From IMG/VR virus record IMGVR_UViG_3300027770_000025, positions 186,001-250,000 of that record: DNA of 64,000 bases; one strand, 5' to 3'. Shown piece by piece: positions 1-54,537 of this stretch (the first letter of the stretch is position 1; each line of letters opens with the position of its first letter). The notes below the pieces were generated by a model. That model was not told where the DNA came from, did no database searches, and saw nothing but the letters and a program-made list of their open reading frames with translations. The translations under genes were made by a program, and so were the position numbers.

Positions 1-311
1 AATAATTCTTCTCCTGATTCTTCTGATGATCCTTCACCTTCAATTTCGTTTCTGATCCAATCAGCAACTTCTTGAATATCGTCTTTAGATGTAGCAATAT
101 GATCAGCAGCCCAATCGTGACCATTCTTAAGATGATTATCGACTTCTTCTGGATCCATTTTAAGAATCTCTTCTATGTAATGTTTAATGGAAGTTAAGTT
201 CGCAAAAAACATGTAATGCTGTTTCTCCTGACCTCCATCCATGTGGTTGTCGTCTTCCACTATTTCCGTAGCTTTTTTCTTGAAGTCGTCAAATGATACT
301 ATTCTTTCCAT
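1..311 (-). CDS. Hypothetical acidic protein, truncated at window edge (MERIVSFDDFKKK...)
   Basis: Translated by hand from ATG at 311; frame stays open to base 1; GATATATA motif at 334-341 upstream. Confidence 0.75.
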   Translation of the reverse strand, partial: MERIVSFDDFKKKATEIVEDDNHMDGGQEKQHYMFFANLTSIKHYIEEILKMDPEEVDNHLKNGHDWAADHIATSKDDIQEVADWIRNEIEGEGSSEESGEEL

Positions 312-349
312 TTTTTAAATTTTTATGTTTATGTATATATCTATCTTCA

Positions 350-940
350 CTATCTAATTATGTAATCTGTGTATTTAGGCTTTGCCGGTGTTTCGTTTGG
401 AAAATAATACTTTATTGTCTTTTTAGACTTTTCTAGGTATATCGTTTTATAAAATCCGCTAGGAACGGTGGCTCCCGTTGGGAGTTTAATTGATTTCTTA
501 TCAAAAACTAGCGTTATAGTAACTGTTACTTTCTCTCTTTTAGCTAATTCCCTCTCATATTCCTCTAGCATTCTCCAAACCCCTCTGTTTAAATATTGGT
601 TTTGTAAAGCGCAGTTTAAATAACTAAATGTTTGGTGCAAAAGCTCCTTAGTGCAATTGAAATCAGCTGCAGGTGCTAAATGCCCTTTATCATAAATATT
701 CTTTACGTAATCTTCATTATCTGATGTTTTGATCGAGTCATTGGTATAAAAATCCATGCCTGCTCTAGAAGCCGTCCCATTTGGACACTGTACGATATAT
801 TGTATCCAGGTGGGCTGTTCTAATTTTTCGCTGTATACCACTTCATATATTGGGGTTTTTACCTTAACCTCTTCTCTAAATTTCTGCCCAAATACTAAGG
901 TCGGTAATAATAGTATTAATATTAATTTTTTCATTAACAA
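350..940 (-). CDS. DNA/RNA non-specific endonuclease (NucA/Serratia beta-beta-alpha-Me family) with signal peptide
   Basis: YDKGHLAPAADF (DRGH motif), FSYLNCALQNQYLNRGVWRMLE, hydrophobic N-terminus. Confidence 0.9.
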   Translation of the reverse strand: MLMKKLILILLLPTLVFGQKFREEVKVKTPIYEVVYSEKLEQPTWIQYIVQCPNGTASRAGMDFYTNDSIKTSDNEDYVKNIYDKGHLAPAADFNCTKELLHQTFSYLNCALQNQYLNRGVWRMLEEYERELAKREKVTVTITLVFDKKSIKLPTGATVPSGFYKTIYLEKSKKTIKYYFPNETPAKPKYTDYIIR

Positions 941-971
941 TTTTTACTACTATTTATCAAAATATCTGAAT

Positions 972-3323
972 TTATTTAGTCCAGCTCCTAGCCTCTATAG
1001 CATCCATTACCTGCTTTGCCGATATTCTCTTGGTGCATTCAAATTGTCTAGATGTTCCTTTATGCTCTGGACACCAGAACCAATCCCCGGGATCAAATGG
1101 GAATTTTTCGGGTGAGTTAAAACAGGAATTACAAACGTCTTCCTTGTGGACCCTAATACAATCCTCATCAAACTCATTATCCTTCTTGGTTACCCCTGAT
1201 ATCACGACAACTTTTTTCCCTAGTGCATGTGCCACCCAAGATAATCCACTGGAAAGCCCTACGAAGAATTCGCAATGCTCTATCCAGTGCATCATTTCTG
1301 TAAGCTCCATGCCTGTCTTATTCATGCAGTTCTTAGGGATCTCGTTCCAATTTCCTTCTGTACCAAAGCTATAATATCGATCTATACAAACTGGGGTTAG
1401 TCCCTTCTTAGTAAGAAGGTCACATAATTTTTCCCAAGAATTGTTATTGTTCCAATGCTTAGCCTGAGCCGTACTATGGCTGGAGAAGCAAACATACTTC
1501 TTATTTAAAGGAGAAGGTTTACCAGATGTCTTTAACTGTGGTCTAACTTTGCCCATATCGGCTAATCCTAGCTGTTTAGCGAAGCCTATTTGTAAAGGTA
1601 AGTCATAGATATAGTCACAGCATATAATGTCTGTATAAGCGCTTAAATCGCCTGGCATTTGTATCAGATTCACATTGGGATATAGATCTTGATACAGAAA
1701 CCCAAAATTACCAACAACATCGCATTCAATCCCATGTCTTTTAGCGTACTCGTCTGCATACGGCATGAACGATATGGTATCACCCAATGCAGCTGTTTTT
1801 AAAATTATAAGCGGATTATGGGATTTAACGTGATTGGGGCTAAAGTAAGATATTATCTGATCCGTGTTTAGCACTCTATAAAATCCAGACTCGTCATCAC
1901 CATTATATTTAAAATGTGGTACATAAATGTCTTCAAGGTATTTTGATTTTTCAGATATTGAAGGAATACACTTAGTCGAAGACACAAAGTCCTTGACTAT
2001 GTCCTTGATATCGTTTCTTCTTATAGTTCCGTCCTCTATTAACACGTGTTGATCTGTTAGATCCATCTTAATTGTTTTTAGAACTTCCACACCATCCTTT
2101 ATAAAGATCTCCCAGTCAATATACTCGTTTTTATCATCAGGAATTGTTGACCAAGCTCTTCCGTTTTTTGCGGTATTTAAAAATGATTTAATCGATCCAG
2201 TTCTGCCATCCCTAAAAAATATTGATTGTCCTACAGCTTCCGGATATGAGCATTTATAAAAATGAGGATGTCTTTTAAACCACGAGTAAAATCCATGATC
2301 TTCTCTCTTTTCTATTCTTTTAGGAATTGTCCGATAATCATTAAGTATAAGATCCTTTTGCGATATCTTACCGAATGATGCATAGTCCATGAGCATTCGT
2401 GAAACGATAACCTCCCATGATATTAAACTTCTTTCCTCTTTACATTCAAGAACATACTGTGAATATCTTTTCATCACATCAGAAACACCATCAACTAGAT
2501 CTACTGTGTTTGCGGTATCTATTCTTTTCATCCCCTTTAAATCAGCTTCCATTAAACCGACAACAGGGATACCCATTGCTATGCTTTCAGTAACTGTTAG
2601 ATTGGGATGCCCGGCCTCAATAGAACCTGGGTTTAAAAAGATGTGGTGCTTTCTCATTTCTGAAAGCGAATCCTCATAATTCAAATCATATATTAAATTA
2701 AGTTTTCTGTATGATGCTACCACATTATTCTTCTCAAAAAACTCCTTGTTGTTTTTACTTGGACATATTATAGTTATTGGTAGATCCAGTACTGCAGCAC
2801 ACTCTATTCCAGGAATGAATCCCTTTCTATCGAATAATGGATCTCCTAAAAGACCGTTGTTTGCCATCATTATTAAACTTGGTCCTTTTTCGATAAGGTC
2901 TTTTGATCTATCCTCGAAATAGTAATCTTCTAAATTAGCTCCGTGGCTGAGATATCTTAGCTGTGGTAAAGAATCGAAATAATCGACAAGATATTTAGCA
3001 TGAACAAAAGATAGAACAGATCCCTTTATAGCTTCCAGATTTTGTTTATAAACAGCTGAATCCTTTCCTAAATGATGTGCGTGGTGGTCGTGGTGAGAAA
3101 AGACATAAGGAATGCCTCTCTCTTTTAAAATTAAAGCTAGATTAGCCATGTGTACATGAACGATATCCCATTCACCTACCCTGACGTCATCTGTGTAAAT
3201 TATTTCAACTTCATGGCCAAGACCTCTTAATACCTTTGTGTACTCCCAGATTATTTTTTCTACTGCTCCCCATCCGTTAGGGGGTATCTGAATTACTCCT
3301 GGTGTGATTTGTGCTATTCTCAT
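972..3323 (-). CDS. GT4 glycosyltransferase fused to a C-terminal AAH/TibC (BAHT)-like heptosyltransferase domain
   Basis: N-term IPPNGWGAVEKII and EAGHPNLTVTES; C-term ALGDTISFMPY, FVGLSSGLSWVAHALGK, and Cys cluster CNSC...WFWCPEH...FEC. Confidence 0.8.
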   Translation of the reverse strand: MRIAQITPGVIQIPPNGWGAVEKIIWEYTKVLRGLGHEVEIIYTDDVRVGEWDIVHVHMANLALILKERGIPYVFSHHDHHAHHLGKDSAVYKQNLEAIKGSVLSFVHAKYLVDYFDSLPQLRYLSHGANLEDYYFEDRSKDLIEKGPSLIMMANNGLLGDPLFDRKGFIPGIECAAVLDLPITIICPSKNNKEFFEKNNVVASYRKLNLIYDLNYEDSLSEMRKHHIFLNPGSIEAGHPNLTVTESIAMGIPVVGLMEADLKGMKRIDTANTVDLVDGVSDVMKRYSQYVLECKEERSLISWEVIVSRMLMDYASFGKISQKDLILNDYRTIPKRIEKREDHGFYSWFKRHPHFYKCSYPEAVGQSIFFRDGRTGSIKSFLNTAKNGRAWSTIPDDKNEYIDWEIFIKDGVEVLKTIKMDLTDQHVLIEDGTIRRNDIKDIVKDFVSSTKCIPSISEKSKYLEDIYVPHFKYNGDDESGFYRVLNTDQIISYFSPNHVKSHNPLIILKTAALGDTISFMPYADEYAKRHGIECDVVGNFGFLYQDLYPNVNLIQMPGDLSAYTDIICCDYIYDLPLQIGFAKQLGLADMGKVRPQLKTSGKPSPLNKKYVCFSSHSTAQAKHWNNNNSWEKLCDLLTKKGLTPVCIDRYYSFGTEGNWNEIPKNCMNKTGMELTEMMHWIEHCEFFVGLSSGLSWVAHALGKKVVVISGVTKKDNEFDEDCIRVHKEDVCNSCFNSPEKFPFDPGDWFWCPEHKGTSRQFECTKRISAKQVMDAIEARSWTK

Positions 3324-3326
3324 TTC

Positions 3327-15747: not shown

Positions 15748-16065
15748 TTAATACTGAAATCTTTGAACTTGATCTATACCGTTGTAATTAATCTCAGGAT
15801 TCGGTGACATTATAACAGAAATACCATCGGATAAATCATATATGCTCTCAATATAGCTTTGAACCTCATCCTTCTTTGATTTGTCTATACCTAGTTGATT
15901 GAGTGCGTCATTAGTAATCTGATCGACAGAATTCATAAAATTTCCGCTATCATGAAAGTTGAAGTATTTTTCATATTTTTTTAGCCAGTTTCTAATCTCT
16001 GCTTGTTGTTCAGGATTAAGATCTAAGTCGTCCATATAGTCGGAGAATTCTAGTATTTTTTTCAT
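15748..16065 (-). CDS. Hypothetical protein (N-term MKKILEFSDY)
   Basis: ORF; GATATATA at 16070-16077. Confidence 0.7.
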   Translation of the reverse strand: MKKILEFSDYMDDLDLNPEQQAEIRNWLKKYEKYFNFHDSGNFMNSVDQITNDALNQLGIDKSKKDEVQSYIESIYDLSDGISVIMSPNPEINYNGIDQVQRFQY

Positions 16066-16576: not shown

Positions 16577-18034
16577 TTATTTATTTTCAAAGTAGATTCC
16601 TGCATGGGCTTCACCCTTTGCTTTACCCGGACTATATTTATCTTCAGGCTCTTCAGTAACCACGAATGCCTTATTAGGGTTTACTATTAATCCCATTCTT
16701 CTCATTAGTGTTCTATTTGCTAAGAATGGTGTGCTTTTATCTGTTCTGCCGACAGGGGAAACTTTAACATTAGGTATTAGGCTTCCGTTAAATTCAAGGT
16801 TAATTTCTATGATAGGTCTAGTGTGTGTATCGCTTCCTATTTCAGCATCAGAATATCCAACGATATCATTAACGAACTTTTTATCACCAACTGACCAAAT
16901 AAGCTTTTTACCATTCTCTTCAATCTCGTCTGCATGAAGAGAGCAGGATTTTGCACCATTTCCTGTGTCAAATTTAGCTACCATGTCACCAATTCCAGGT
17001 ACAGATACTTTCTCAAGATAACCAATTTCTAAATTAGCATAGCTCCAATTAGCCTTATCTAAGATGTAATCAAGTACATCATTAACAATGGGTTTACCTA
17101 TAGCCTTGGAAATACCCTCGGTTCCAGGGGATGAATTAACCTCTAAAATATATGGTTTCTTAGTTTTCTTATCTATCATGATATCTACTCCACACCAGTG
17201 GCATCCAACTGCGTTAGCTGCTTTGCAAGCTATTTCTACTAAATCCTCTGGAATTTCGTAATTTGATACAGATCCGCCTAAAGAATAATTAGTTCTAAAA
17301 TCTTTATCTACCGCCTCTCTTTTCATAGACCCTAATATAATACAGTTGTCTGAAGATGGTTTGATTGGATCAAAGTTCTTAATTATAACCTGAATTCTAA
17401 GGTCAAAGTTTGAATCGATTTTTTCCTGAACTAATATCTCGCTGTTCTCGTCAAGTTTTCTTATCGTTTGATATACAGACTTTAAAGATGCGTAAGAATC
17501 CACAATAGAAACCCCGATACCTTGGGTTCCTGATAAAAGCTTCATGATGATTGGGAATTTGCCACCTATCTTTTCTAGTGCAGAATCAAGAAATTCCTCA
17601 TTCGGTACTAAAGCATATTTAGGAACGGGTAATCCCGCTTCCTCCATATATTGTGAAGTTATGTACTTATTTTCACAAACCTCAATGGATTCCAGTGTAT
17701 TCACAGTGAAATATCGGTCAGCTTCTAATTGTGTCAAAATTTGCTTAGTGTAAGAGTTTTCTATCACTCCTCTTCTTGGTATAATCACCGTTGAATTGGG
17801 ATCAATTAAAATTCCCTCTTTTCCAGTTTTTAATAGATGCCCATTATAAACTTTTTCTATCATCACTTGATTTACGTCAACCACATAGCATTCAACGCCC
17901 CTTTTTTCGCATTGTTCTGCGAAAGACTTAGATGTCTTACTTCCCTGCGTATTTCCAGTCAGAACTATAACCTTAGTAGTTTCACCTTTTGCTTCATTCA
18001 AAAAAGACCAAAAATCCAATACTTTACCAGCCAT
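16577..18034 (-). CDS. rimK: RimK-family ATP-grasp ligase fused to RimK-associated aspartic-protease-like domain
   Basis: CENK...LPVPK, PIIMKLLSGTQGIGV, LVQE...DLR, FRTNYSLGG, GVDIM, EVNSSPG; C-term AKFDTGNG...FLANR. Confidence 0.85.
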   Translation of the reverse strand: MAGKVLDFWSFLNEAKGETTKVIVLTGNTQGSKTSKSFAEQCEKRGVECYVVDVNQVMIEKVYNGHLLKTGKEGILIDPNSTVIIPRRGVIENSYTKQILTQLEADRYFTVNTLESIEVCENKYITSQYMEEAGLPVPKYALVPNEEFLDSALEKIGGKFPIIMKLLSGTQGIGVSIVDSYASLKSVYQTIRKLDENSEILVQEKIDSNFDLRIQVIIKNFDPIKPSSDNCIILGSMKREAVDKDFRTNYSLGGSVSNYEIPEDLVEIACKAANAVGCHWCGVDIMIDKKTKKPYILEVNSSPGTEGISKAIGKPIVNDVLDYILDKANWSYANLEIGYLEKVSVPGIGDMVAKFDTGNGAKSCSLHADEIEENGKKLIWSVGDKKFVNDIVGYSDAEIGSDTHTRPIIEINLEFNGSLIPNVKVSPVGRTDKSTPFLANRTLMRRMGLIVNPNKAFVVTEEPEDKYSPGKAKGEAHAGIYFENK

Positions 18035-27619: not shown

Positions 27620-28156
27620 TTAAGATTTATTAAAATAAATCTCCATTATTTGATCTGGTGATATTTTAACAGTGTAGTAGTCTTTTAAACTTGGCTCTCT
27701 TTTAATCTTGCTTACAAAAGAAGCAGGAATACCGATTAAATAATCCTTTCCGATCTCTCTAACAACTCCTTCGATAGCATATTCAGAGTCAACAAAAACG
27801 TTAATTTCGTCTCTGTATTCTTCATCCTCTGGCCTATCAGCTCTTTCGATTCTACTTCCGTATATAGCTTGTTGTCTTTGAGCCATTCTTTCTCTTTCCT
27901 TTGTCATTAAATCCCTAACATATCCAGGAGCATTTTTACCTTGGGTAGGTAAATCTGCAATAACATTAACGGAAGCAAGCTCGCCAGCTTCAACCTTGTT
28001 TAAAAGCCCTTCAATAACCGCAGGAATTTGGGTCCATTTAATTTCCATTTCTGGTTTAGACTTTGTATCCTTTACGAATTCTGCCTCATCATAAACTGGG
28101 ATAGCGCCTTCGTTTACCTGATTTTCGTAAGATTCATATTCTAGTAAATGTTTCAT
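27620..28156 (-). CDS. Hypothetical protein (start revised to MKHLLEYESY)
   Basis: The ORF-track start overlaps the GATATATA box at 28177-28184; next ATG is 28156. Confidence 0.65.
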   Translation of the reverse strand: MKHLLEYESYENQVNEGAIPVYDEAEFVKDTKSKPEMEIKWTQIPAVIEGLLNKVEAGELASVNVIADLPTQGKNAPGYVRDLMTKERERMAQRQQAIYGSRIERADRPEDEEYRDEINVFVDSEYAIEGVVREIGKDYLIGIPASFVSKIKREPSLKDYYTVKISPDQIMEIYFNKS

Positions 28157-28193: not shown

Positions 28194-28940
28194 TTATAAA
28201 TAGTCCTTTATGTTAGCATAGGTAGCCAACGCATTGTACTTTCTGGTCTCTTCTGGTGGTAGATTAGTCATTTGTTTATACATTAGCACCCTATCTTCAT
28301 CTCCCATCTCCGGCCAATACTCTTCTAGAGCCTGTTGATAAGCCATTCCTTTTTCCATTAGCGCAAAGATGGAATACAAAGTTGTTTTAGTGACTGAATT
28401 ATCAGCACAATTGAAATTCCGACCAACCGTCTGAGGTGCTCCCTCCAGAGATGTGAGATGATTGTGACGACAATTGAAATCCCCGTCAACGCTCTGTGGT
28501 GCTCCCACCAGTGAGGTGAGCTCATTGTTACGACAATTGAAACTCCACCCAACCGTCTGAGGTGCTCCCTCCAGTGTGGTGAGCCGATTGTCATAGCAAT
28601 TGAAACTCCCACCAACCGTCTGAGGTGCTCCCTCCAGTGAGGTGAGCTCATTGTCGTCACAATAGAAACCCGCACCAACGGTCTGAGGTGCTCCCCCCAG
28701 TGTGGTGAGCCGATTGTTATAACAAACGAAATCCCCACTCACGTCTCCGAACTTAACACCTTTAAGATCTGTCAGACCCTGTTCGCTACAATAGAAACTC
28801 CCAACCACATCAACAAGACCTGTTTGTGGATTAAGCTTCCATTTTCTTTTTACACATTTATCCAACCAGCCAATCTGCTTCGCTGTAAGTGCAGCTGTCG
28901 CACTGGCTTCGAATAGTGCATATGGTAAAACATGTTTCAT
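28194..28940 (-). CDS. Leucine-rich-repeat-like protein with 21-aa repeats
   Basis: Units LTxLxGAPQxVxxxFxCxxN; N-term MKHVLPYALFE. Confidence 0.8.
   Translation of the reverse strand: MKHVLPYALFEASATAALTAKQIGWLDKCVKRKWKLNPQTGLVDVVGSFYCSEQGLTDLKGVKFGDVSGDFVCYNNRLTTLGGAPQTVGAGFYCDDNELTSLEGAPQTVGGSFNCYDNRLTTLEGAPQTVGWSFNCRNNELTSLVGAPQSVDGDFNCRHNHLTSLEGAPQTVGRNFNCADNSVTKTTLYSIFALMEKGMAYQQALEEYWPEMGDEDRVLMYKQMTNLPPEETRKYNALATYANIKDYL
28400..28740 (-). repeat. 63-nt coding tandem repeat, ~5 units plus a degenerate one
   Basis: GGTGCT anchor ends at 28440, 28503 and 28566, giving a 63-nt period. Confidence 0.9.
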
Positions 28941-31031: not shown

Positions 31032-31658
31032 TTATTTTTTTGATTTCAAACCAAGTCTTTCCCTGACTTGTTTTAGCACTTTATCCTTTCCTTCGTTAGC
31101 TTCTACCTTTATAAGCTTACGACTTTTTTGATAAAAGTCTAATAATGGAAAAGTCTTCTCGTGATATTCTTTGAATCTTTTCTCAACTATTTCTTCGCTA
31201 GCATCATCTTTTCTATTCTCTTCCTTAGCTCTGCTTTTTATTCTTTCCCTGGCTACTTTATCAGGAAGATCTAAGTAAATGGCATGATTCAAACCTAAGC
31301 CCATTCTACCTAAAAGAGAATCTAGTCTTTTTGCTTGCTTTATCGTTCTAGGAAATCCATCAAGTATAACATTAGAACTGGGATCAATTTTTTTAAGTTC
31401 AGCCCTGAGCATTTTTATCATCATATTATCAGGAAGTAGATTTCCAGCATCTATGATTTTTTTTATATCTTCATCTTTGGAATTTCTTATTAGATCACCA
31501 GTTGACAAGTGGATAAAGTTATAGTCTTTTTTTAATTCCTTAGATAATGTTCCCTTACCTGATCCAGGTGCTCCTAAGATAACAAGGATTTTACCCTGGT
31601 TATCAGGAAGTTGTCTTTCATTTAGTGCAAAATCTTCAAAAGTTTTTATTCTTTCCAT
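31032..31658 (-). CDS. adk: Adenylate kinase, short-lid type (start revised to MERIKTFEDF)
   Basis: GAPGSGKGT, HLSTGDLIR, LDGFPRT, R..DD; the ORF-track start lies inside nrdA. Confidence 0.9.
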   Translation of the reverse strand: MERIKTFEDFALNERQLPDNQGKILVILGAPGSGKGTLSKELKKDYNFIHLSTGDLIRNSKDEDIKKIIDAGNLLPDNMMIKMLRAELKKIDPSSNVILDGFPRTIKQAKRLDSLLGRMGLGLNHAIYLDLPDKVARERIKSRAKEENRKDDASEEIVEKRFKEYHEKTFPLLDFYQKSRKLIKVEANEGKDKVLKQVRERLGLKSKK

Positions 31659-37157: not shown

Positions 37158-37239
37158 TTTTTTTATTTACGTATGTTTTATACCAATACCATCTTTTTAT
37201 TTCGATCTTTACTTAAGTTTCATGAAGATATATAAAAAT

Positions 37240-37545
37240 ATGAAGAATTTAAAAAACATTTACCAATTTATCAATGAGTGGCTTGATTCACCGGGTAGTA
37301 TCGACGTTCCTGGTCAGAATTCGGAAATTAGAGTCAATTCTAGAAATTACAAAACACAGAATCAGCAGCTTCCCGAAGTTGTTGATGCTATGTTCGAGGC
37401 AGCATATTTTCACGATTTTCTAGATGAGGAGGGCAAATCAGAGGAATTTAATAAATTTTTAGATGGTGGGAAAAAATCGGGTGCTCAGGTAACAAGCTAT
37501 ATAAAAGACTCTTTTAAAAATAAGGCATCTAAAAAGAGAGATTAA
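37240..37545 (+). CDS. Hypothetical protein (start revised to MKNLKNIYQFINE)
   Basis: GATATATA at 37227-37234 precedes ATG 37240; the longer ORF-track start overlaps polB. Confidence 0.65.
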   Translation: MKNLKNIYQFINEWLDSPGSIDVPGQNSEIRVNSRNYKTQNQQLPEVVDAMFEAAYFHDFLDEEGKSEEFNKFLDGGKKSGAQVTSYIKDSFKNKASKKRD

Positions 37546-37590: not shown

Positions 37591-38589
37591 ATGTACTCAA
37601 AAATATACGACTTTTGTAAAGTCAAAAATTTAGGAAATTGCTACAGAAACGGGGAAAGCCCAACACCGAGGGTAAACTTCATATTAGATCTTTGTGATCA
37701 AATGGGGCTTAAATACGAGTTGGATATTTTCGCAGACAACAGATCTAGTGCTGGTGATGATATGACAATGAGGGATTTCCGCTACATACTAGATACCCTG
37801 TCACCCGATAAAAGAAAGGATGCACTGGATCTATATAAAGAATTCACCCAAAAGGTAAAAGATCTTGACACCGACTTTGAAAATTCGGGTCTAGAGGATG
37901 ATGATTCTGCTATCGATTTCCACGAGGAAAAATATTACCAGCTGGAAGATGAATACTCTGAAAAATTAAAAGGAATTGCAGGAGAGATAAAAAAAGGTGT
38001 TAATAACTACTTCAATATAGTTCTTCCTGGATCATCAGATAAATTTGTTGTAGCACACCACGACATCGTAAATAAAGATTCAGATAATGCCAATGATAAT
38101 TCTTGCTCAGTTATAAATGCTTTAATGATTAAGAAGCTAAGACCTGAGGTAAACGTGGTTATATTAGACGGAGAGGAATTCGGAGGTATAGGATCTAATC
38201 AATTAGCACAAAGAATTAAAGCAGGTGATTTCAAATGTAAATGGGTGCTTAACCTAGAGCTAACTGGTAAGGGCGGAAAAAGCTTCTTCGTTGGAGCTAT
38301 GGGAACACCTTTAACAGATTGGATCGCAAATAGATTTGAATGCCCAATCGTAAATGTGCCATTCAATGATTCAGTGATATTTAAGAAATATGGAATAAAT
38401 AGCACTGTGATTAATCCTCTTCCTGTAACAGATGAAAAAAGCCCGGTTATAAATAAGGATGGTGAATACCTAAACTTTAAAATGCTATTCAACTGTCACA
38501 AAATGACAGACTCAGTAGACAGCATTGATCCAAAAGATATGGAAGAATTCGTTAATGAAGTTTGTCTAAAAATAATAGACGAAGCTTGA
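37591..38589 (+). CDS. M28-family Zn peptidase-like protein with an acidic helical insertion
   Basis: VAHHD, DNANDNSCS, LDGEE.G..GS, NLELTG, H...DS. Confidence 0.75.
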   Translation: MYSKIYDFCKVKNLGNCYRNGESPTPRVNFILDLCDQMGLKYELDIFADNRSSAGDDMTMRDFRYILDTLSPDKRKDALDLYKEFTQKVKDLDTDFENSGLEDDDSAIDFHEEKYYQLEDEYSEKLKGIAGEIKKGVNNYFNIVLPGSSDKFVVAHHDIVNKDSDNANDNSCSVINALMIKKLRPEVNVVILDGEEFGGIGSNQLAQRIKAGDFKCKWVLNLELTGKGGKSFFVGAMGTPLTDWIANRFECPIVNVPFNDSVIFKKYGINSTVINPLPVTDEKSPVINKDGEYLNFKMLFNCHKMTDSVDSIDPKDMEEFVNEVCLKIIDEA

Positions 38590-38690
38590 GACGTATAAAA
38601 CTATTTGAAGAATTTATTGAGTATGTTATGCCGGTAAAAAAGCGTAACATGAAAAACATAGTCATTATACCTAATTGGAAGGTCTATTAA
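38586..38690 (+). CDS. 34-aa ORF MRRIKLFEEFIEYVMPVKKRNMKNIVIIPNWKVY (TTG start)
   Basis: Hand translation; TTGA overlap with the M28 stop; carries the shared N-terminal motif. Confidence 0.5.
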   Translation: MRRIKLFEEFIEYVMPVKKRNMKNIVIIPNWKVY

Positions 38691-39977: not shown

Positions 39978-41867
39978 TTATTGCTTGATTTCTTCGTACT
40001 CTACATCTTGTAAATCTTCCGCACTATCAGAAGTTTGTTCGGAAGGGGATTCAGTTGCTTGAGCTTGCTGATCTGCTGCATATACAGCAGAAGCTATTAC
40101 ATTCATCTTATCAGAAAGAATCTTCATTGTGGATTCGATAGCATCTAAATCGTCACCGTCCATGATTTTTCTTAATTCTTCTATTTTATCAGAGATCTCT
40201 TGTTTATCTGAATCACTTACCTTGTCGCCAAAGTCGCTAATCGCTTTTTCCATCTGAAAACACATAGAAGAAGCTTCATTATAAAGCTGAGATTTTCTTA
40301 ATCTCTCCTTATCTGCCTCTGCATTTGCTTCAGCATCATTTTTCATCTTTTCAATTTCTTCATCAGTTAGCTTAGATCCTGATTCAATTCTAATATTTTG
40401 AACTTTACCTGTTCCCTGATCCTTAGCAGAAACCTTAATAATACCGTTGGCATCAATATCAAATGTAACTTCGATCTTTGGAATACCCCTCATTGAAGGC
40501 GGAATATCAGTTAACTGAAATCTGCCAAGAGATCTGTTATCTGTAGCCATTGCTCTTTCCCCTTGTAATACGTGTATCTCCACTGCTGGTTGGTTATCAA
40601 CAGCTGTAGAAAATACCTCGCTCTTTGTTACTGGTATAGTTGTGTTGGATTCGATCAATTTAGTAAATACACCACCTACTGTTTCTATTCCTAGAGAAAG
40701 AGGTGTGATGTCTAACAAAAGAACGTCTTTAATATCTCCAGCTAGCACTCCTCCTTGGATAGCAGCTCCAATAGCTACCACCTCATCAGGATTAACGCCC
40801 TTGGAAGGTTTCTTACCGAAAAGTTTTTCAACTTCTTCCTGTACCTTAGGTATCCTTGTAGATCCGCCTACTAAAATAACCTCATCAACCTGAGCAGCTG
40901 TTAAACCTGCATCTTTCAATGCTTTCTTACAAGGTTCTAATGTTCTTTTAATTAGATCCCCGCACATAGACTCGAATTGAGCTTTAGATAATTTCTTTAC
41001 GAAATGTTTAGGCCCATTTGAATCTGCACTTAAATAAGGAAGGTTAATCTCTGTCTCATTAGAAGCAGAAAGTTCAACTTTTGCTTTCTCCGCACCTTCT
41101 CTAATTCTTTGATAAGCCGTAGGGTCTTTAGAAGCATCCACACCGGTTTCATCTTTAAATGCAGCAACTACCCAATCGATAATCATTTCATCAAAGTTGT
41201 CACCACCTAAGTGGGTGTCACCGTTGGTGGAAAGAACCTCAAATACTCCAGATCCTATTTCTAGGATTGAAACGTCAAATGTACCGCCACCTAAGTCATA
41301 CACTGCAACCTTAAGATCTTTGTCACCTTTATCCAGGCCATAAGCTAAAGCTGCTGCTGTTGGTTCGTTAATAATACGGAGTACTTCTAATCCTGCAATT
41401 TCACCAGCCTCTTTAGTTGCTTGTCTTTGGCTATCGTTGAAATAAGCAGGAACTGTAATTACCGCTTGGGTAACAGCTTCTCCTAAATACTCCTCTGCAG
41501 TTCTTTTTAGATTCTGTAAAATTATTGCCGAAATTTCTTGGGGTACGTATGTTTTTCCGTTTGCTTCTACTACTACCTTATCACCCTTTTCTTTTTTTAC
41601 TTTATAAGACATTTTACCTGCCTCATTTTTAATCTCCGAATACTTAGATCCAATAAACCTTTTTACTGAATAGATAGTATTCTCTGGGTTAGTAACCGCT
41701 TGTCTCTTTGCAGAGTCTCCGATTCTAATGTCACCATCTTTAAAAGAAACCACACTAGGTGTAGTTCTTTTTCCCTCCTGGTTAACAATAACTGAGGGTG
41801 TGCTTCCTTCAATTAGGGAAACACATGAATTTGTTGTTCCTAGGTCAATACCAATTACTTTTGCCAT
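39978..41867 (-). CDS. dnaK: Chaperone DnaK (Hsp70)
   Basis: [33 protein letters not shown]. Confidence 0.98.
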
Positions 41868-42536: not shown

Positions 42537-42767
42537 TTAGTCTAAGGTTTGTTTTATATTGGTTTTAAAAATACGAACTATATTGCCGTCCGGATTCTTA
42601 GTGATATATCCTATTATATCATTGTATATATCATATATGGGAGACTGTATTAGTAGTTTTCTGTTTAGATTGTCCAATACCCATTTGTTTAGGATCTTGC
42701 TTTCCTCTTTTGACATATCTCTTTTAACAGACTCAAATTCAAAACTGCTTCCTGTACAATTACACAT
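42537..42767 (-). CDS. Hypothetical protein
   Basis: ORF track. Confidence 0.55.
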   Translation of the reverse strand: MCNCTGSSFEFESVKRDMSKEESKILNKWVLDNLNRKLLIQSPIYDIYNDIIGYITKNPDGNIVRIFKTNIKQTLD

Positions 42768-43192
42768 TATCTATAATTTCCTCTTTCTTGTTTGCGTTTA
42801 ATATATTGCCAAAGGTATCTTAATCCCTTTGCATACTCAGAAGGTCTGCTAAAAGGCTTGCCGAAGTCTTTTATATCGTTTCCGTTACCCTCCATTCTTT
42901 CGCCGGGATTATCCTCATTCTTTAGTGGATTATATCTTCTAACCTTTCCTGTTGGGTGGATAGTATAGAATACTTTATCGTGGCCCTTCTCGTTTTTATT
43001 GTTGGTTACCCTAATAAATTTTAGAGTGTTGTTGATTTCCTGCTGATGTGATGTATCCTCTTTGAAACCAAGTTCTATTAGTCTCTTATAGTCAACTGTC
43101 TTTCTAACAAGATCCAGGTTAAGGGATCTTCTAGAATCTGATTTGTATTCCTCATCCGGACTGTATTTTTCATATTCTAATAGGTACTTCAT
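42767..43192 (-). CDS. Hypothetical protein (N-term MKYLLEYEKY)
   Basis: ORF; AATATATA 4 nt upstream of the start. Confidence 0.7.
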   Translation of the reverse strand: MKYLLEYEKYSPDEEYKSDSRRSLNLDLVRKTVDYKRLIELGFKEDTSHQQEINNTLKFIRVTNNKNEKGHDKVFYTIHPTGKVRRYNPLKNEDNPGERMEGNGNDIKDFGKPFSRPSEYAKGLRYLWQYIKRKQERGNYR

Positions 43193-44818: not shown

Positions 44819-45382
44819 TTATCTGCTAATTAATACAGATTTTTTTGTTGATCCCTGTTGAACCGACCAATTTTCTCCTAAATAAGAAATAATAATTGAC
44901 TTCATAAACTCAATATATTCACCCTTACCGTCAAATTCTAAATTGTCCTGTATTTCATCATATATTCTATTGGTCTTAGGATTTGATTCTAGATAGCTGC
45001 TTAAACATTTCGATGCGTATTCCATTATTCTAGAAACCTCATTTCCACCTGCTTTGAATTTCATAGTGTTAGGCTGAGGAACTTCCTCTTTCTTTACCGC
45101 TATGTCTTCTATTAATTCATGAGAAATCTCATTCAATGTAAGTACACAATATGAATTTTTAGGTCCATCTATAACTTCGTTATTAGAATATTTTCCGATT
45201 ATGAAATGAAATCCTTTTTCATCTTCACCCCTTTCATCTTCTATATCAAAGAAGTAGTTGTAAATATCCCCGTTTTTTACCAAGAGGAAAGGAGAAGTAC
45301 CGAATCCATCTGATTCATGCATAGACCTTGACTCCAGATCATTTATTTTGAATTGCTCGAATGTAGATATTATTCTTCTCAT
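44819..45382 (-). CDS. Hypothetical protein (N-term MRRIISTFEQF)
   Basis: 187 aa ORF. Confidence 0.7.
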   Translation of the reverse strand: MRRIISTFEQFKINDLESRSMHESDGFGTSPFLLVKNGDIYNYFFDIEDERGEDEKGFHFIIGKYSNNEVIDGPKNSYCVLTLNEISHELIEDIAVKKEEVPQPNTMKFKAGGNEVSRIMEYASKCLSSYLESNPKTNRIYDEIQDNLEFDGKGEYIEFMKSIIISYLGENWSVQQGSTKKSVLISR

Positions 45383-47422: not shown

Positions 47423-48355
47423 TTAACCAATTCTGTTTATTTCTGTTGGTATTTCTAGACCAGCTCTTTCAAGATATTCCAGAAATCTTTGTTTTATTTC
47501 AGGTAATCTTTCGTGTAGATCAAATTTTGGATCTTCTATTATATCTAATAAAGCCTCGAAAGTTTTAACATCCTCTAGTTTATATCCCTGACCCAATGCA
47601 AAGTTTATAAATTCTTGAGGATCTCTTGTCACAAATCTTTCGCTTCCCTCTAATTTCTTAGAGTGTTTTAATCGGGGGATTCTAATTCCTTTGTATGATT
47701 TCGTGTGCCAATATAATCCGTCACTAAGAATCAATACAGGTGCATTATAGTCCATGATTTCCCCAGTTTCATCTGTATCTATTATTTCTTTTCTAGCGGA
47801 TAGTATGGCTGATAAAAGCCAGTTTCTGTGTGCTGATTTGTATTTACTCTCGTCCACTTTATAATTGGGCGAATAGTAAATAAAATCTGCCCATTCCATG
47901 CTGGATAATGGGATAAGGTCCAATTGAACTATGCCCTTTTGTAAATCACCTTCTATTGGCCAGCCAAGGCTAACCACGTTTAATCCCTTCAGATAATTTA
48001 TTTCTGGTTCAAATCCAAGTGCTTCTGCAAGTTGTGTTCTTAGTATGGTATCAACCGTTGCCGAACATTCTTTAGCGCCTACCCCATGCTCTCGTGAAAA
48101 GAAAGTTGTATCATAGCCAAGATCAAGATCACCTGATGTGTCATCGGGATTCTTTTTCTTACCTATGCTTCCGATTATAATATATTCCTCCCCGTACTTA
48201 TCAACATCTATACCTAGAAGTGGAAAAAGAATTTCTTTGATACTATCAAGGGTTTTAGGAAATTCATCTTCACGAATTCTCCTTGAGGTTTTTATGGCAG
48301 CGCCACCCTCAAATATCTTGGAAAAGCCTGAAAAATTTAAAACAGTATTACCCAT
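47423..48355 (-). CDS. Pol-beta superfamily nucleotidyltransferase (start revised to MGNTVLNFSGF)
   Basis: IGSIG...SGDLDL and a third Asp in VQLDLI. Confidence 0.75.
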   Translation of the reverse strand: MGNTVLNFSGFSKIFEGGAAIKTSRRIREDEFPKTLDSIKEILFPLLGIDVDKYGEEYIIIGSIGKKKNPDDTSGDLDLGYDTTFFSREHGVGAKECSATVDTILRTQLAEALGFEPEINYLKGLNVVSLGWPIEGDLQKGIVQLDLIPLSSMEWADFIYYSPNYKVDESKYKSAHRNWLLSAILSARKEIIDTDETGEIMDYNAPVLILSDGLYWHTKSYKGIRIPRLKHSKKLEGSERFVTRDPQEFINFALGQGYKLEDVKTFEALLDIIEDPKFDLHERLPEIKQRFLEYLERAGLEIPTEINRIG

Positions 48356-48893
48356 TATTTTTTTGAATCTTATCATAATATCTTCCCATAGCACCACTTA
48401 AATAGCTGCTATATTGTTTCTCGTCGTCTGTTTTAGGCTTAAGCGGATCATAGTTTTTACCGAAGTAGCTTTTACCTTTAAGAGCACCTGATTTATAGAA
48501 ATCTTCAGCATCTTTCTGTGTAACGTTCTTATCCCCTATTTTTTCCTTCTCCCAATCATCCAAGACATCTTTCTCTTTAGACTTAAGATCAGCTTTAGAC
48601 ATTTTAGAATAGCTATCTTTAGAATCACCTTTAAAGAAAAAATCAGAAATAGCAGCTCCTGAGCTAGCTATCAATCTTCCGAAAAGTGGAATAATTGAAT
48701 TTATTCTATTAATCGTTGCCCTTCCTCCGTCATCCGGACCTGGATCAGTATCTCCCCTAAGCTTATCGTACTCGTATTCCATGTTTGCATCCACCTTTCT
48801 AAGCCATCTGCTTAGTTTAGTATTGCCTTTATATAAGTCGATTTCACCTTCAGTTAGCGATTCTGTAAAAGTATCAAATTTCTTTATCCTCAT
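48348..48893 (-). CDS. Hypothetical protein (N-term MRIKKFDTFTE)
   Basis: ORF; GATATATA upstream. Confidence 0.7.
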   Translation of the reverse strand: MRIKKFDTFTESLTEGEIDLYKGNTKLSRWLRKVDANMEYEYDKLRGDTDPGPDDGGRATINRINSIIPLFGRLIASSGAAISDFFFKGDSKDSYSKMSKADLKSKEKDVLDDWEKEKIGDKNVTQKDAEDFYKSGALKGKSYFGKNYDPLKPKTDDEKQYSSYLSGAMGRYYDKIQKNNG

Positions 48894-50463: not shown

Positions 50464-50475
50464 TATCTATATATC

Positions 50476-52228: not shown

Positions 52229-52232
52229 GGGA

Positions 52233-52265: not shown

Positions 52266-52277
52266 TTAGGTTATCTA

Positions 52278-53340: not shown

Positions 53341-53628
53341 TTATATCTTTGTGATGTTGTATTCTTTTGTGATTAACCTACCTGTACGAAGACCGTTTTG
53401 TGACCAATGTGTTTTTATTGGAGCACTAGCTATATCTCCGTAGCGAGCTTGTAAATGACCGTTACGGTTATTGTGTGATGCTGTTATCTTTGCGATAACA
53501 CTAAACGAATTTAAAGATGGATGAGATGCCTCTTCTGCAGAGTATAGATACTCTGACCTTTTAGAAAAATAGTTTAATTTACTAGAGGTCTGCTGTGTGT
53601 TCTGTTTCAAAATTTCCTTTAATTCCAT
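53341..53628 (-). CDS. Possible hypothetical protein (could be a non-coding leader)
   Basis: 95 aa ORF overlapping the end of the RuvC-like gene. Confidence 0.35.
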   Translation of the reverse strand: MELKEILKQNTQQTSSKLNYFSKRSEYLYSAEEASHPSLNSFSVIAKITASHNNRNGHLQARYGDIASAPIKTHWSQNGLRTGRLITKEYNITKI

Positions 53629-54289
53629 AAATTTCTTTTAGTTCTTTCTTTAAATACAATGTTATCCAAGTTGCGTCCACAATATCATCAATCGGTTTGT
53701 TAACTACCTTAGCTGGTGTTATCCACTCAGTTTTGTTAGTTTCTAATATATTAGCAAAGATTGCTAAATTTGTTTCATTCTCTTTGTAAATACATAGAGA
53801 ATTATATAGTTCGTCCTTTTTAGCATTACCCTTTAAGGCGAATTTTTTAATAGATGTCGGAGAGAAAACGTGAAACCTTTCCACACCAACCCTATCTATT
53901 ATTTTTTTCCTTAATAATGCAGTAGCCATAGATATATCTATAAGTGCATTACCATTAGAGGAGAAACTTAATCCTTCCATAGCAACATGGAAATTTGAAT
54001 CCCCCATAACTTCTTCTATACTACTCCAAAACGAATCAACAATTTCCAGGAAGTAAACTATTTTGATTCTTTCCCTGCCTGTATAATCATCGGGTAATTC
54101 CTTCTTATCAAGGAAGATGAATTTAAAATCCTTCTCCGCTTCTAAAACGGCAAAAGGTTTCTTTGAACTCTTTCTTAGTGATTCCGGGCTTCTGTCGGAT
54201 CTTGTCAAAGATCCCCAAATATACCTACCATCTTTATAACAGCAAAAAGCGGGGGAGTTTATAGAAAAATCGATTCCTACTGCATTCAT
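53582..54289 (-). CDS. RuvC-like Holliday junction resolvase
   Basis: VGIDFSINSPA, VAMEGLSF, P.SIKKFA..GNA.K, DDIVDA. Confidence 0.82.
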   Translation of the reverse strand: MNAVGIDFSINSPAFCCYKDGRYIWGSLTRSDRSPESLRKSSKKPFAVLEAEKDFKFIFLDKKELPDDYTGRERIKIVYFLEIVDSFWSSIEEVMGDSNFHVAMEGLSFSSNGNALIDISMATALLRKKIIDRVGVERFHVFSPTSIKKFALKGNAKKDELYNSLCIYKENETNLAIFANILETNKTEWITPAKVVNKPIDDIVDATWITLYLKKELKEIYGIKGNFETEHTADL

Positions 54290-54303
54290 AAAAAATTTAC
54301 GAA

Positions 54304-54537
54304 TTAAGAAGGGTGAATAATCTGGCCCACCGATCCTGTATATCCATAAACTTTAGCAAGCTTTTCGAAACAAGATTTCATTTGTGCATCTGTTAAACAA
54401 CTTACCAAGTCATTTAATACTCTTTGGTCGTTACCTGCAGCAGATACCAAAAGGTTTTTCATTTGGTCCTTTTCATCACCTAGTGGCTGACCATACTTCA
54501 TTTCGTTTAATTCTTTTACGTCTGAAAACTTTTTCAT
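54304..54537 (-). CDS. Hypothetical protein (N-term MKKFSDVKELNE)
   Basis: ORF; GATATATA at 54557-54564. Confidence 0.65.
   Translation of the reverse strand: MKKFSDVKELNEMKYGQPLGDEKDQMKNLLVSAAGNDQRVLNDLVSCLTDAQMKSCFEKLAKVYGYTGSVGQIIHPS

What the first reader, a model, noticed from the sequence alone, without database searches (positions are those of the whole stretch)
1..54537. T4 capsid-targeting-like motif on many unrelated proteins: a probable injected-protein payload
Seen at N-termini: MERIVSFDDF (311), MKKILEFSDY (16065), MAGKVLDFWSFLNE (RimK), MKHLLEYESYENQVNE (28156), MKHVLPYALFE (LRR), MERIKTFEDFALNE (Adk), MKNLKNIYQFINE (37240), MRRIKLFEEFIE (38586), MKYLLEYEKY (43192), MRRIISTFEQF (45382), MGNTVLNFSGFSKIFE (Pol-beta NTase), MRIKKFDTFTE (48893) and MKKFSDVKELNE (54537). 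Similar words end other proteins (VLSFKDF, VDNYLEF, LKDYRDW). Known: T4 internal proteins carry MKT(Y/F)xEFxxE, which targets them to the prohead and is cleaved after Glu by gp21. Inference: RimK ligase, Adk, an NTase and an LRR protein are packaged and delivered at infection, which would be an enzyme-rich ejected arsenal.
Basis: partly seen in the sequence, partly recalled or inferred. Interest (0 to 1): 0.75.

Follow-up and report, generated by a model that had tools for sequence, protein, structure and literature searches.

The report
Capsid-loading tag on many phage proteins
A 348-kb uncultured T4-like jumbo phage puts the same 11-14-residue N-terminal tag, which resembles the T4 capsid-targeting leader and ends in a head-protease-type cut site, on about 55-70 unrelated late proteins; this most likely marks them for loading into the capsid, so the packaged protein set could be read from sequence alone.

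Summary
In the whole 348,582-bp genome, 52 of 438 genes start with [ILVM]xx[FY]xx[FYW] at residues 3-6, against 3.8 expected. A profile scan gives 54 genes in 48 unrelated families.

Evidence that fits a capsid-targeting leader:
- The tag is usually followed by [LIVM]-x-E and then S/A/G, the T4 gp21 cut-site type.
- The genome encodes a gp21-family protease, a gp23-family capsid protein and a gp55-like late sigma factor.
- Tagged genes share the promoter-like word GATATATA with the protease, portal, sheath, neck and fibre genes (34/54 against 28/384).
- The tag lines up with the T4 leader MKTYQEFIAE in a register shifted by three residues.
- The same aromatic-xx-aromatic-[LIV]-x-E word is the unit of a 13-copy repeat in the protease-scaffold fusion protein.
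- The tag recurs at residue 1 of hundreds of protein families from related uncultured jumbo phages.

I found no report of it in the papers I searched. Capsid targeting with proteolytic removal is the best explanation (about 0.68). Delivery into the host is untested. The C-terminal "similar words" are chance, 38586 is not a convincing gene, and the NTase and LRR labels are weak. This is a new variant of a known kind.

The parts
3..311 (-). Tagged gene. It runs off the left end of the window and is 139 aa in the genome. N-terminus MERIVSFDDFKKKATEIVE|D.
   Evidence: GATATATA lies 30 nt upstream.
15748..16065 (-). Tagged gene, 105 aa, MKKILEFSDY... No [LIVM]xE follows nearby.
   Evidence: Promoter word 12 nt upstream. 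No Pfam family.
16577..18034 (-). RimK-type ATP-grasp ligase with the tag: MAGKVLDFWSFLNE|A.
   Evidence: Pfam RimK 2.3e-32. The pre-ATP-grasp domain starts at residue 21. Promoter word 32 nt upstream.
27620..28156 (-). Tagged gene, 178 aa from the second ATG: MKHLLEYESYENQVNE|G.
   Evidence: The promoter word lies 28 nt upstream of this ATG and overlaps the upstream ATG, which supports this start.
28194..28940 (-). Tagged member of a 7-gene paralogue family (..EQIGWLDKCV..): MKHVLPYALFE|A.
   Evidence: A paralogue has LRR_4 at 1.7e-7; this copy has only a weak DUF4893 hit. Promoter word 15 nt upstream.
31032..31658 (-). Adenylate kinase with the tag: MERIKTFEDFALNE|RQLPDNQG, then the P-loop.
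   Evidence: Pfam ADK 3.1e-40 from residue 27. 116 of the 120 closest homologues keep the tag. In the AF2 model residues 1-22 have pLDDT 51-60 and the fold starts at residue 24. It has no promoter word of its own and is the last gene of the nrdB-nrdA string.
37240..37545 (+). Tagged gene, 101 aa: MKNLKNIYQFINE|W (variant with I at position 7).
   Evidence: GATATATA at 37227, 13 nt upstream. No Pfam family.
42767..43192 (-). Tagged gene, 141 aa, MKYLLEYEKYSPDEE. No cut site follows nearby.
   Evidence: The variant word AATATATA lies 12 nt upstream.
44819..45382 (-). Tagged gene, 187 aa: MRRIISTFEQFKINDLES.. The first [LIVM]xE is MHE23|S.
   Evidence: No promoter word.
47423..48355 (-).
   Evidence: No Pfam or PHROG family. 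Weak NTP_transf_2 lead only.
48348..48893 (-). Tagged gene, 181 aa: MRIKKFDTFTE|S.
   Evidence: Promoter word 24 nt upstream.
54304..54537 (-). Short variant, 77 aa: MKKFSDVKELNE|M.
   Evidence: Promoter word 27 nt upstream. It lacks the aromatic pair.
38586..38687 (+). Doubtful: a TTG-started frame of 33 codons, (L)RRIKLFEEFIE.., which may be a decayed tag gene.
   Evidence: No ATG and no promoter word. It overlaps the end of the M28 peptidase gene at 37591-38589.
61955..61962 (-). Example of the promoter-like word GATATATA in front of a structural gene, the tail-fibre-like gene 60210-61925. Other copies on the minus strand in the window start at 341, 10664, 16077, 18066, 28184, 28955, 35717, 42632, 44083, 48917, 50475 and 54564, with one on the plus strand at 37227.

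Best explanation
The motif is the capsid-targeting leader of this phage lineage, a longer version of the T4 CTS.

**Consensus.** M-[KR]-x-[ILV]-K-x-[FY]-[EN]-x-[FY], then either [ILV]-N-E or an immediate E, then a small residue.

**Proposed course of events (inferred).**
1. Tagged proteins are made late from GATATATA promoters, together with the head proteins.
2. The two aromatic residues and the upstream I/L dock the leader onto the prohead core. The likely docking site is the 13 tandem 14-residue repeats (Y-x-x-Y-[LIV]-A-E) in the C-terminal half of the protease-scaffold fusion protein, because the leader looks like one such unit.
3. The capsid protein shell closes around the core.
4. The gp21-family protease cuts after the Glu of [LIV]-x-E in the leaders, in the scaffold repeats and in the capsid protein propeptide (candidate sites LINE6, PLIE18, SLNE43).
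5. The scaffold fragments leave the head. The mature cargo stays in the head and, by analogy with the T4 internal proteins, leaves with the DNA at infection.

**Cargo.** Identified members are a RimK-type ligase, adenylate kinase, SLT, CHAP, two PG_binding_1 proteins, GDPD and an LRR family. Most of the rest have no known family.

**Shown here.** The motif, its position lock at the N-terminus, the unrelated carriers, the cut-site word, the promoter association, the homology of the head genes, the scaffold repeat and the spread across a clade.

**Inferred.** Binding, cleavage, packaging and ejection.
For: 1. **Enrichment and position lock.** 52 genes against 3.8 expected, with 36 cores starting at residue 4. 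The 54 carriers fall into 48 unrelated families.
2. **Cut-site word.** [LIVM]xE at residues 8-20 occurs in 74% of carriers and 22% of other genes. With S/A/G after it the figures are 54% and 7%, and 3.4% for internal windows. [LIV]NE occurs in 30% against 3%.
3. **T4-type head machinery.**
   - Gp23 MCP, 3.6e-41. It aligns with T4 gp23 from residue 1.
   - Peptidase_S77 and PHROG head maturation protease, 2.1e-37. GELDHP and ISSRA align with T4 H85 and S140.
   - A gp55-like sigma factor.
4. **T4 comparison.**
   - The T4 leaders, read from the T4 record, are MKTYQEFIAE|A for IPII and IPIII and MKTFKEF... for IPI (PMC8442874).
   - In T4, residues 4 and 7 serve targeting and residues 8 and 10 serve processing (PMC9026906, section 2.6).
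   - With a three-residue shift, Y4/F7/I8/E10 of T4 match F7/F10/I11/E13 here.
   - The genome also holds T4-form leaders: MKTFKDFIYE and MLKYREFVINE.
5. **Late-promoter word.**
   - GATATATA lies 12-40 nt upstream of 34/54 carriers against 28/384 other genes (Fisher 5e-20).
   - The other genes include the protease, portal, tail sheath, neck and tail fibre genes and about 10 genes with variant tags.
6. **The tag is an appendage.** The Adk fold starts at residue 24 and the RimK domain at residue 21. 116 of 120 Adk homologues keep a diverging but pattern-conserving tag.
7. **Scaffold link.**
   - Ar-xx-Ar-[LIVM]-x-E occurs 45 times in the proteome: 13 in the scaffold repeat, 14 in N-termini, and 18 elsewhere against about 20 expected.
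   - All 11 related genomes checked have a protease-scaffold fusion with 7-13 such units next to the MCP gene. Nine of the 11 have a tag-like gene next to the protease or MCP gene: 7 between portal and protease, where T4 has gp67 and gp68, and 4 just after the MCP gene.
8. **Clade-wide use.**
Of 153 matches, 143 open an ORF of at least 50 aa.
   - Residues 11-13, not specified in the search pattern, are mostly [ILV]-N-E.
   - 13 of 24 records have a Gp23 match; most of the rest (8 of 11) are 3-32% complete fragments.
   - 355 cluster representatives match the tag profile at E<=1e-3, and 139 of the best 150 match at residue 1.
Against: - There is no proteomic, structural or genetic evidence. 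The phage is uncultured, and I found no cultured phage with the tag. Tenacibaculum phage pT24 lacks it.
- About a quarter of the tags have no [LIVM]xE within 20 residues, for example window 16065 and 43192.
- Adk and a few others lack the promoter word and sit among nucleotide-metabolism genes. Their timing is therefore uncertain.
- My profile, built on the long form of the tag, scores the T4 leaders negatively. The match to T4 depends on choosing a shifted register.
- The late character of GATATATA is inferred from the genes it precedes, not measured.
- The complex prediction of protease-scaffold with the Adk leader gave no verdict.
- Fifty to seventy cargo species is far more than in T4. Some tagged proteins may be core or scaffold parts that are degraded rather than delivered.
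Confidence: 0.68

Rival explanations
1. The tag marks proteins of the prohead core itself, in the way of T4 gp67, gp68 and gp22. They would co-assemble with the scaffold, be degraded by the protease and be expelled, so they would not be delivered cargo.
For: The tag resembles the scaffold repeat unit. Small tagged genes sit between the portal and protease genes in relatives, where T4 has gp67 and gp68. Three tagged coiled-coil-like, K/E-rich proteins follow the MCP gene.
Against: Folded enzymes such as Adk, RimK, SLT, CHAP and GDPD carry a single leader and have no obvious excess of internal sites. In T4, proteins with one leader are cut once and retained (PMC8442874). This rival probably holds for a subset only.
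Confidence: 0.12
2. The leader is a propeptide or localisation/degradation signal unrelated to the capsid. Examples would be an inhibitory propeptide removed in the cytoplasm, a degron for a Clp-type protease, or a handle for some other late complex.
For: Several carriers are cell-wall hydrolases that would benefit from latency. Adk sits in the nrd gene string without a promoter word of its own. A ClpA-like gene is listed among widely shared genes of moraphages (PMC12619734); I did not look for it in this genome.
Against: This rival does not explain the likeness to the T4 leader, the likeness to the scaffold repeat, or the shared [LIV]-x-E with the MCP propeptide. It also does not explain the restriction of the tag to phages with gp23/gp21-type heads.
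Confidence: 0.12
3. The motif is a nucleotide-level feature of late genes (a translation-initiation or mRNA-structure signal), or it is a by-product of K-rich, AT-rich gene starts and of paralogy.
For: The genome is 36% G+C. MK.. starts are common, with K at residue 2 in 106 of 438 genes. One 7-member paralogue family carries the tag.
Against: Conserved positions use many codons (position 4: ATA, ATT, CTA, TTA, GTT, ATC, GTA, CTT; position 7: TTT, TAT, TAC, TTC). Shuffling residues 2-20 gives 3.8 hits against 52 observed. The carriers form 48 unrelated families. Within the Adk family the pattern is kept while the letters change.
Confidence: 0.03
4. It is a secretion or membrane signal that takes the lytic enzymes to the cell envelope.
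For: Carriers include SLT, CHAP, PG_binding_1, Hydrolase_2 and GDPD domains.
Against: The leader has no hydrophobic core; charged residues occur every two to three positions. Its net charge is near zero. It also sits on cytoplasmic enzymes (Adk, RimK). True signal peptides in the same genome look different, for example MKKLILILLLPTLVFGQ at window 934.
Confidence: 0.03

Closest known systems
[quoted passage not shown]
   Same: - A short N-terminal leader on otherwise unrelated proteins.
- Aromatic or hydrophobic determinants three residues apart.
- The leader ends in [LI]-x-E followed by a small residue.
- The phage has a gp21-family protease, a gp23-family capsid protein and a gp55-like sigma factor.
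- The genes are scattered or clustered in variable regions.
- Some leaders here are almost the T4 form (MKTFKDFIYE, MLKYREFVINE).
   Different: - The usual form is three residues longer, with an extra I/L-K-x turn. It is 11-14 residues against 10 in T4.
- It sits on about 55-70 genes (13-16% of the gene set), against four matches in T4.
- Its carriers include metabolic and cell-wall enzymes.
- The scaffold is fused to the protease and is built of repeats that resemble the leader.
- Function is untested.
Propeptides of inner-body and ejection proteins of phiKZ-like giant phages (phiKZ, 201phi2-1, SPN3US; PMC5694885, PMC7411985)
   Same: Many head-internal proteins, including enzymes, are processed by a gp21-related prohead protease after Glu and are ejected into the host.
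   Different: In those phages most propeptides are longer than 100 residues. The cut-site word there is S/A/G-x-E and no short shared leader is known (PMC5694885). Here the leader is short and shared, and P3 is L, I or V.
T4 prohead core proteins gp67, gp68 and scaffold gp22
   Same: Their genes lie in the portal-protease-MCP gene string, and they have multiple [LI]-x-E sites. In 7 of the 11 relatives checked, a small tagged gene occupies the gp67/gp68 position.
   Different: No sequence similarity was detected and there are no PHROG hits. The scaffold here is a C-terminal extension of the protease with 14-residue repeats.

Membership tests
T4-type capsid targeting sequence / gp21-processed head-internal proteins | A short leader at the extreme N-terminus, shared by proteins that are otherwise unrelated | tested here: met
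   52 genes against 3.8 expected; 36 cores start at residue 4; 48 unrelated families. 139 of the best 150 library matches start at residue 1.
T4-type capsid targeting sequence / gp21-processed head-internal proteins | Targeting determinants: aromatic or hydrophobic residues three apart (T4 residues 4 and 7) | tested here: met
   [FY]7 and [FYW]10, plus [ILV]4. This corresponds to T4 Y4 and F7 in a register shifted by three. In the unshifted register the T4 leaders score negatively on my profile.
T4-type capsid targeting sequence / gp21-processed head-internal proteins | The leader ends with the gp21 cut-site word [LI]-x-E | tested here: met
   74% of carriers against 22% of other genes. With S/A/G after it, 54% against 7%. 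About a quarter of the tags lack it.
T4-type capsid targeting sequence / gp21-processed head-internal proteins | The phage encodes a gp21-family (Peptidase_S77) prohead protease and a gp23-family capsid protein | tested here: met
   The His and Ser align with T4 H85 and S140.
T4-type capsid targeting sequence / gp21-processed head-internal proteins | Made late, together with the head proteins | tested here: inconclusive
   The GATATATA word is shared with structural genes and a gp55-like sigma factor is present. No expression data were examined.
T4-type capsid targeting sequence / gp21-processed head-internal proteins | The protein is found inside proheads and virions with the leader removed | not testable with these tools
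   The phage is uncultured. No proteome is available.
T4-type capsid targeting sequence / gp21-processed head-internal proteins | The protein is ejected into the host with the DNA | not testable with these tools
   This rests on analogy with the T4 internal proteins only.
phiKZ-type inner-body / ejection protein propeptides | Long propeptides (mostly over 100 residues) cut at S/A/G-x-E | tested here: not met
   The leaders are 11-20 residues long. P3 is L in 24, I in 8, F in 3, M in 3 and V in 1 of 39 sites. Definition from PMC5694885.
Sec/Tat/lipoprotein signal peptides | An uninterrupted hydrophobic core of about 7-15 residues after a basic N-region | tested here: not met
   Direct reading of the 54 leaders shows K, E, N or D every two to three positions. 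A typical signal peptide is present elsewhere in the window (MKKLILILLLPTLVFGQ).

The most novel reading that the evidence does not exclude
A whole clade of uncultured T4-superfamily jumbo phages of Bacteroidota (the moraphage/Lak neighbourhood) loads dozens of different proteins into the capsid. The cargo would include nucleotide-metabolism enzymes, an ATP-grasp ligase, cell-wall hydrolases and, in relatives, an Acb1-type anti-CBASS enzyme. Loading would work through a 13-residue leader that copies one unit of the phage's own repeat-built scaffold, and the prohead protease would then cut both leader and scaffold. If this is so, the set of ejected proteins of uncultured phages can be read directly from sequence, and the leader is a portable packaging tag.
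Probability: 0.4. Interest if true: 0.85.

Novelty: new variant of a known kind. Interest (0 to 1): 0.72.

Why it matters
- **Reading the cargo from sequence.** Proteins carried in the capsid and released at infection act before any phage gene is expressed, for example as anti-restriction factors, host take-over enzymes or wall-piercing enzymes. For uncultured phages they are invisible today. A sequence tag that marks them would let the ejected protein set be listed for hundreds of jumbo phage genomes.
- **Unusual cargo.** The tag points to cargo not usually expected in a capsid, such as adenylate kinase and a RimK-type ligase.
- **A mechanism for the CTS.** The likeness between the tag and the scaffold repeat suggests how a capsid targeting sequence works, namely by mimicking a scaffold unit. 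I am not aware that its binding partner has been pinned down, even in T4.
- **A candidate tool.** The tag may serve as a packaging tag for protein delivery by phages of Bacteroidota.
- **Annotation aids.** The GATATATA word and the tag both help to place late genes and true start codons in these genomes.

Tried and rejected
- **Complex prediction.** Protease-scaffold residues 1-480 with Adk residues 1-40 gave no verdict (score 0.00, partner pLDDT under 30). This is no evidence either way.
- **Nearest phage records.** Megablast of the tail-fibre region against phage records found no match.
- **The 90-aa T4-form tagged protein.** tblastn against phage records found no match.
- **PHROGs on head-module tagged proteins.** Seven head-module tagged proteins (five from this genome, two from a relative) and three other genes (one untagged head-module gene, two tagged window genes) gave no family.
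- **Search for a cultured phage with the tag.**
  - Tenacibaculum phage pT24 has an Adk but no enrichment of the tag word (20 matches against 28 in the reversed control).
  - Cluster look-ups for 10 Adk homologues gave no organism names.
- **Literature.** No paper in the library contains MKHIKLFE, MKYIKLFE, MKRIKLFE, IKLFEEF, IKLFEQF or IKTFESF. The moraphage paper does not mention N-terminal motifs.
- **C-terminal 'similar words'.** Rejected as chance.
- **Paralogy and nucleotide-level explanations.** Rejected.
- **Profile against T4.** My long-form profile does not recognise the T4 leaders in the same register. The likeness holds only with a three-residue shift or for the short-form leaders.
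- **Gene calls.** They come from my own simple codon-usage caller, not a standard tool. Counts could shift by a few genes.
Full report
**What the window is.** The window is bases 186,001-250,000 of a single 348,582-bp IMG/VR virus record. The record has 36% G+C and CheckV rates it complete.

It belongs to the T4 superfamily:
- It has a Gp23-family major capsid protein, 3.6e-41. This protein aligns with T4 gp23 from residue 1.
- It has a Peptidase_S77 head maturation protease. The motifs GELDHP and ISSRA align with T4 gp21 H85 and S140. That these are the catalytic residues comes from my own knowledge.
- It has a gp55-like late sigma factor.

The nearest capsid proteins in phage records are an uncultured 462-kb phage (LR756500, 45% identity) and the Prevotella Lak megaphages (47%). 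The window also carries DnaK and DnaJ genes. That fits the recently described "moraphages", large aquatic phages predicted to infect Flavobacteriia (PMC12619734).

**Check of the observation.** Twelve of the 13 listed N-termini read as stated. The frame at 38586 starts with TTG, has 33 codons and has no promoter word, so I do not count it.

I called 438 genes across the genome with a simple codon-usage caller.
- The core [ILVM]xx[FY]xx[FYW] begins at residue 3-6 in 52 genes. About 3-4 are expected from internal positions, from internal Met residues, or from shuffled N-termini (maximum 11 in 1000 shuffles).
- Thirty-six cores begin exactly at residue 4.
- A position matrix found 54 genes. After removal of the first 22 residues, these form 48 families with no BLASTP similarity.
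- Codon choice at the conserved positions is varied, so the constraint acts on the protein.
- The C-terminal "similar words" are at chance level, 8 observed against 5.6 expected.
- Only about a fifth of the tagged genes lie in the window. The densest cluster, about 30 genes mostly on the minority strand, lies at genome 97-127 kb.
- Counting short and variant forms, the total is about 55-70 genes.

**Anatomy of the tag.** The consensus is M-[KR]-[NHY]-[IL]-K-x-[FY]-[EN]-x-[FY]. Two endings follow.
- One ending is [ILV]-N-E, as in FALNE|R in Adk and FLNE|A in RimK.
- In the other, the residue between the aromatics is I, L or M and Glu follows the second aromatic directly, as in YQIFE|A and NLFE|S.

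Both endings give [LIVM]-x-E.
- This word is present at residues 8-20 in 74% of carriers against 22% of other genes.
- With S, A or G next, the figures are 54% against 7%, and 3.4% for internal windows.
- T4 gp21 cuts after [LI]-x-E. This comes from my own knowledge; the review mentions a gp21 cleavage logo and gives LIE-9 as an example (PMC9026906).

The same word occurs elsewhere in the head proteins:
- in the capsid protein propeptide (LINE6, PLIE18, SLNE43), where the H-x-H-x-L-[NY]-E site is kept in all 11 relatives checked;
- at the protease's own N-terminus (MPQLQSINE|N here, MNEPQLLIE|T in T4).

**Comparison with T4.** From the T4 record itself the leaders are:
- MKTYQEFIAE|A for IPII and IPIII;
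- MKTFKEFTSTTTPVSTITE|A for IPI;
- MKTFKEFIKE|D for a 54-codon ORF (the sequence is also given in PMC8442874).

In T4, residues 4 and 7 carry targeting and residues 8 and 10 carry processing (PMC9026906, section 2.6).

In the same register my profile does not score these leaders. Shifted by three residues, YQEFIAE lines up with FEQFINE: aromatic, x, x, aromatic, I, x, E.

The genome also holds nearly T4-form leaders. Examples are MKTFKDFIYE (genome 82832-83458) and MLKYREFVINE|E (genome 298121-298393, two genes after the MCP gene). The tag is therefore best seen as a T4 CTS with one extra N-terminal turn.

**Independent support 1: a shared late-promoter-like word.** GATATATA occurs 77 times in the genome against 35 expected. 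Sixty-five copies lie 12-82 nt upstream of a gene start on the correct strand.
- It precedes 34 of 54 tagged genes and 28 of 384 others (Fisher 5e-20).
- The others include the head protease, a portal protein, the tail sheath, a neck protein and a tail-fibre-like protein, plus about ten genes with variant tags.
- Several tagged genes without the word directly follow a tagged gene that has it.
- Together with the gp55-like sigma factor, this looks like the counterpart of the T4 late promoter TATAAATA (my own knowledge).
- It also fixes start codons. At window 28156 the word lies between the upstream ATG and the tag's ATG.

**Independent support 2: the tag is an appendage.**
- The Pfam ADK match starts at residue 27 and the RimK pre-ATP-grasp match at residue 21.
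- In an AlphaFold2 model of Adk built with 32 homologues, residues 1-22 have pLDDT 51-60 and the fold starts at residue 24.
- Among the 120 closest Adk homologues (65-97% identity), 116 keep the tag. The letters vary (MEQIKYFEQFLNE, MDRILNFDKFTLNE, MKTIIKSFEDFKLLE, MYKIVDFNSFSKIYE) but the pattern is constant.

**Independent support 3: likeness to the scaffold.** The protease gene (genome 302345-304309) encodes 654 residues. The protease domain spans residues 19-291. It is followed by 13 tandem 14-residue units, K-x-I-x-Y-[ST]-E-Y-[LIV]-A-E-N-[LV]-D, at residues 297-478.
- The word aromatic-xx-aromatic-[LIVM]-x-E occurs 45 times in the proteome. Thirteen are these units, 14 lie in the first 25 residues of proteins, and 18 lie elsewhere, where composition predicts about 20.
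- LR756500 and all 11 other relatives I fetched have the same protease-scaffold fusion, with 7-13 units, next to the MCP gene.
- Nine of the 11 have a tag-like gene next to these head genes. Seven have one between portal and protease, where T4 has gp67 and gp68, and 4 have one just after the MCP gene.
- I infer that the tag docks by behaving as one more scaffold unit, and that the protease then cuts both. This step is a hypothesis. The repeat units share one origin, so their number is not 13 independent observations.

**Spread.**
- Of 153 matches, 143 open an ORF of at least 50 residues, and 129 have a closed frame within 15 codons upstream.
- The 136 distinct proteins form 101 families.
- Residues 11-13, which the search did not specify, are I/V/L in 62%, N in 37% and E in 56%.
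- ATATATA lies within 50 nt upstream in 34%, against 1.4% of random windows.
- Thirteen of 24 source records have a Gp23 match. Eight of the 11 without one are fragments rated 3-32% complete.
- A profile of the tag found 355 cluster representatives at E<=1e-3 among 1.84 billion. Of the best 150, 139 match at residue 1.
- Of 88 of these scanned with Pfam, most have no family. Single members carry Acb1 (anti-CBASS), Zeta_toxin/AAA kinases, a cytidylyltransferase and others.

**Cargo in this genome.** Pfam hits on tagged genes:

| Family | Note |
|---|---|
| RimK | window gene |
| ADK | window gene |
| PG_binding_1 | two genes |
| SLT | |
| CHAP | |
| GDPD | |
| Hydrolase_2 | weak |
| Pterin_4a | the motif overlaps the start of the domain, so this gene is doubtful |
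| LRR_4 | in a 7-gene family with one member in the window |

Most tagged genes have no family. Wall-degrading enzymes among the carriers fit proteins that act on entry. I found no mention of the motif in the papers I searched.

**Verdict.** The best explanation is a T4-type capsid-targeting leader removed by the prohead protease, with confidence about 0.68. That the mature proteins are delivered into the host follows only by analogy.

Rivals retain some weight:
- tagged proteins are core components that are degraded rather than delivered;
- the leader is a propeptide or degron unrelated to the capsid.

Nucleotide-level, paralogy and secretion-signal explanations are essentially excluded.

The system is a new variant of a known kind. 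It uses the same logic as the T4 CTS, but with a longer tag, on 13-16% of the genes, on enzymes, across a large uncultured clade, and with a scaffold built from tag-like repeats.

Noticed in passing
Window 35757-37157 (-) and 18507-19655 (-): The family-B DNA polymerase is split into two genes 16 kb apart. One holds the exonuclease domain and the start of the polymerase domain; the other holds the rest of the polymerase domain.
   Followed up: no
Window-wide; the copies are listed in 'parts' (for example 61962, 54564, 37227): GATATATA, 12-40 nt upstream of start codons, precedes structural and tagged genes. It is likely the late promoter of this lineage (T4: TATAAATA). A gp55-like sigma factor lies at genome 320414-320773.
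   Followed up: partly
Genome 302345-304309 (L017:16345-18309, -), outside the window: The prohead protease is fused to a scaffold-like tail with 13 tandem 14-residue repeats (Y-x-x-Y-[LIV]-A-E). The fusion is conserved in LR756500 and in all 11 other relatives checked.
   Followed up: yes
Window 39978-41867 (-) and 23131-24174 (-): DnaK- and DnaJ-like genes, judged from their N-terminal sequences ([15 protein letters not shown]..., [10 protein letters not shown]...). They match the hallmark described for 'moraphages' (PMC12619734). I ran no family search on them.
   Followed up: no
Genome 316048-317661 and 317671-319281 (-), outside the window: Two tandem genes of 537 and 536 aa with similar MAGF... 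N-termini, probably portal paralogues. Only 317671-319281 was scanned (PHROG portal, 7e-54). They lie about 13 kb from the protease-MCP pair, whereas relatives have one portal gene close to the protease gene, usually with one small tagged gene between.
   Followed up: no
Genome 97-127 kb (L009, L010), outside the window: An island of about 30 consecutive tagged genes, mostly on the minority (+) strand, many with their own GATATATA. It is reminiscent of the variable internal-protein regions of T-even phages.
   Followed up: partly
Window 972-5219 (-) and 29079-30344 (-): A set of glycosyltransferase genes: GT9-like, GT1 fused to an FkbM methyltransferase, and GT2 with TPR-like repeats.
   Followed up: no
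Alignment A3 (library proteins P0122-P0267): Among 88 tagged proteins from public metagenomes, one carries Pfam Acb1 (anti-CBASS) together with 2_5_RNA_ligase2. This hints that counter-defence enzymes may be among the cargo in relatives. I did not identify which member.
   Followed up: no
Window 37591-38589 (+): A Peptidase_M28 gene on the minority strand, directly after the tagged gene 37240-37545. The doubtful TTG frame 'RRIKLFEEFIE' overlaps its end.
   Followed up: partly
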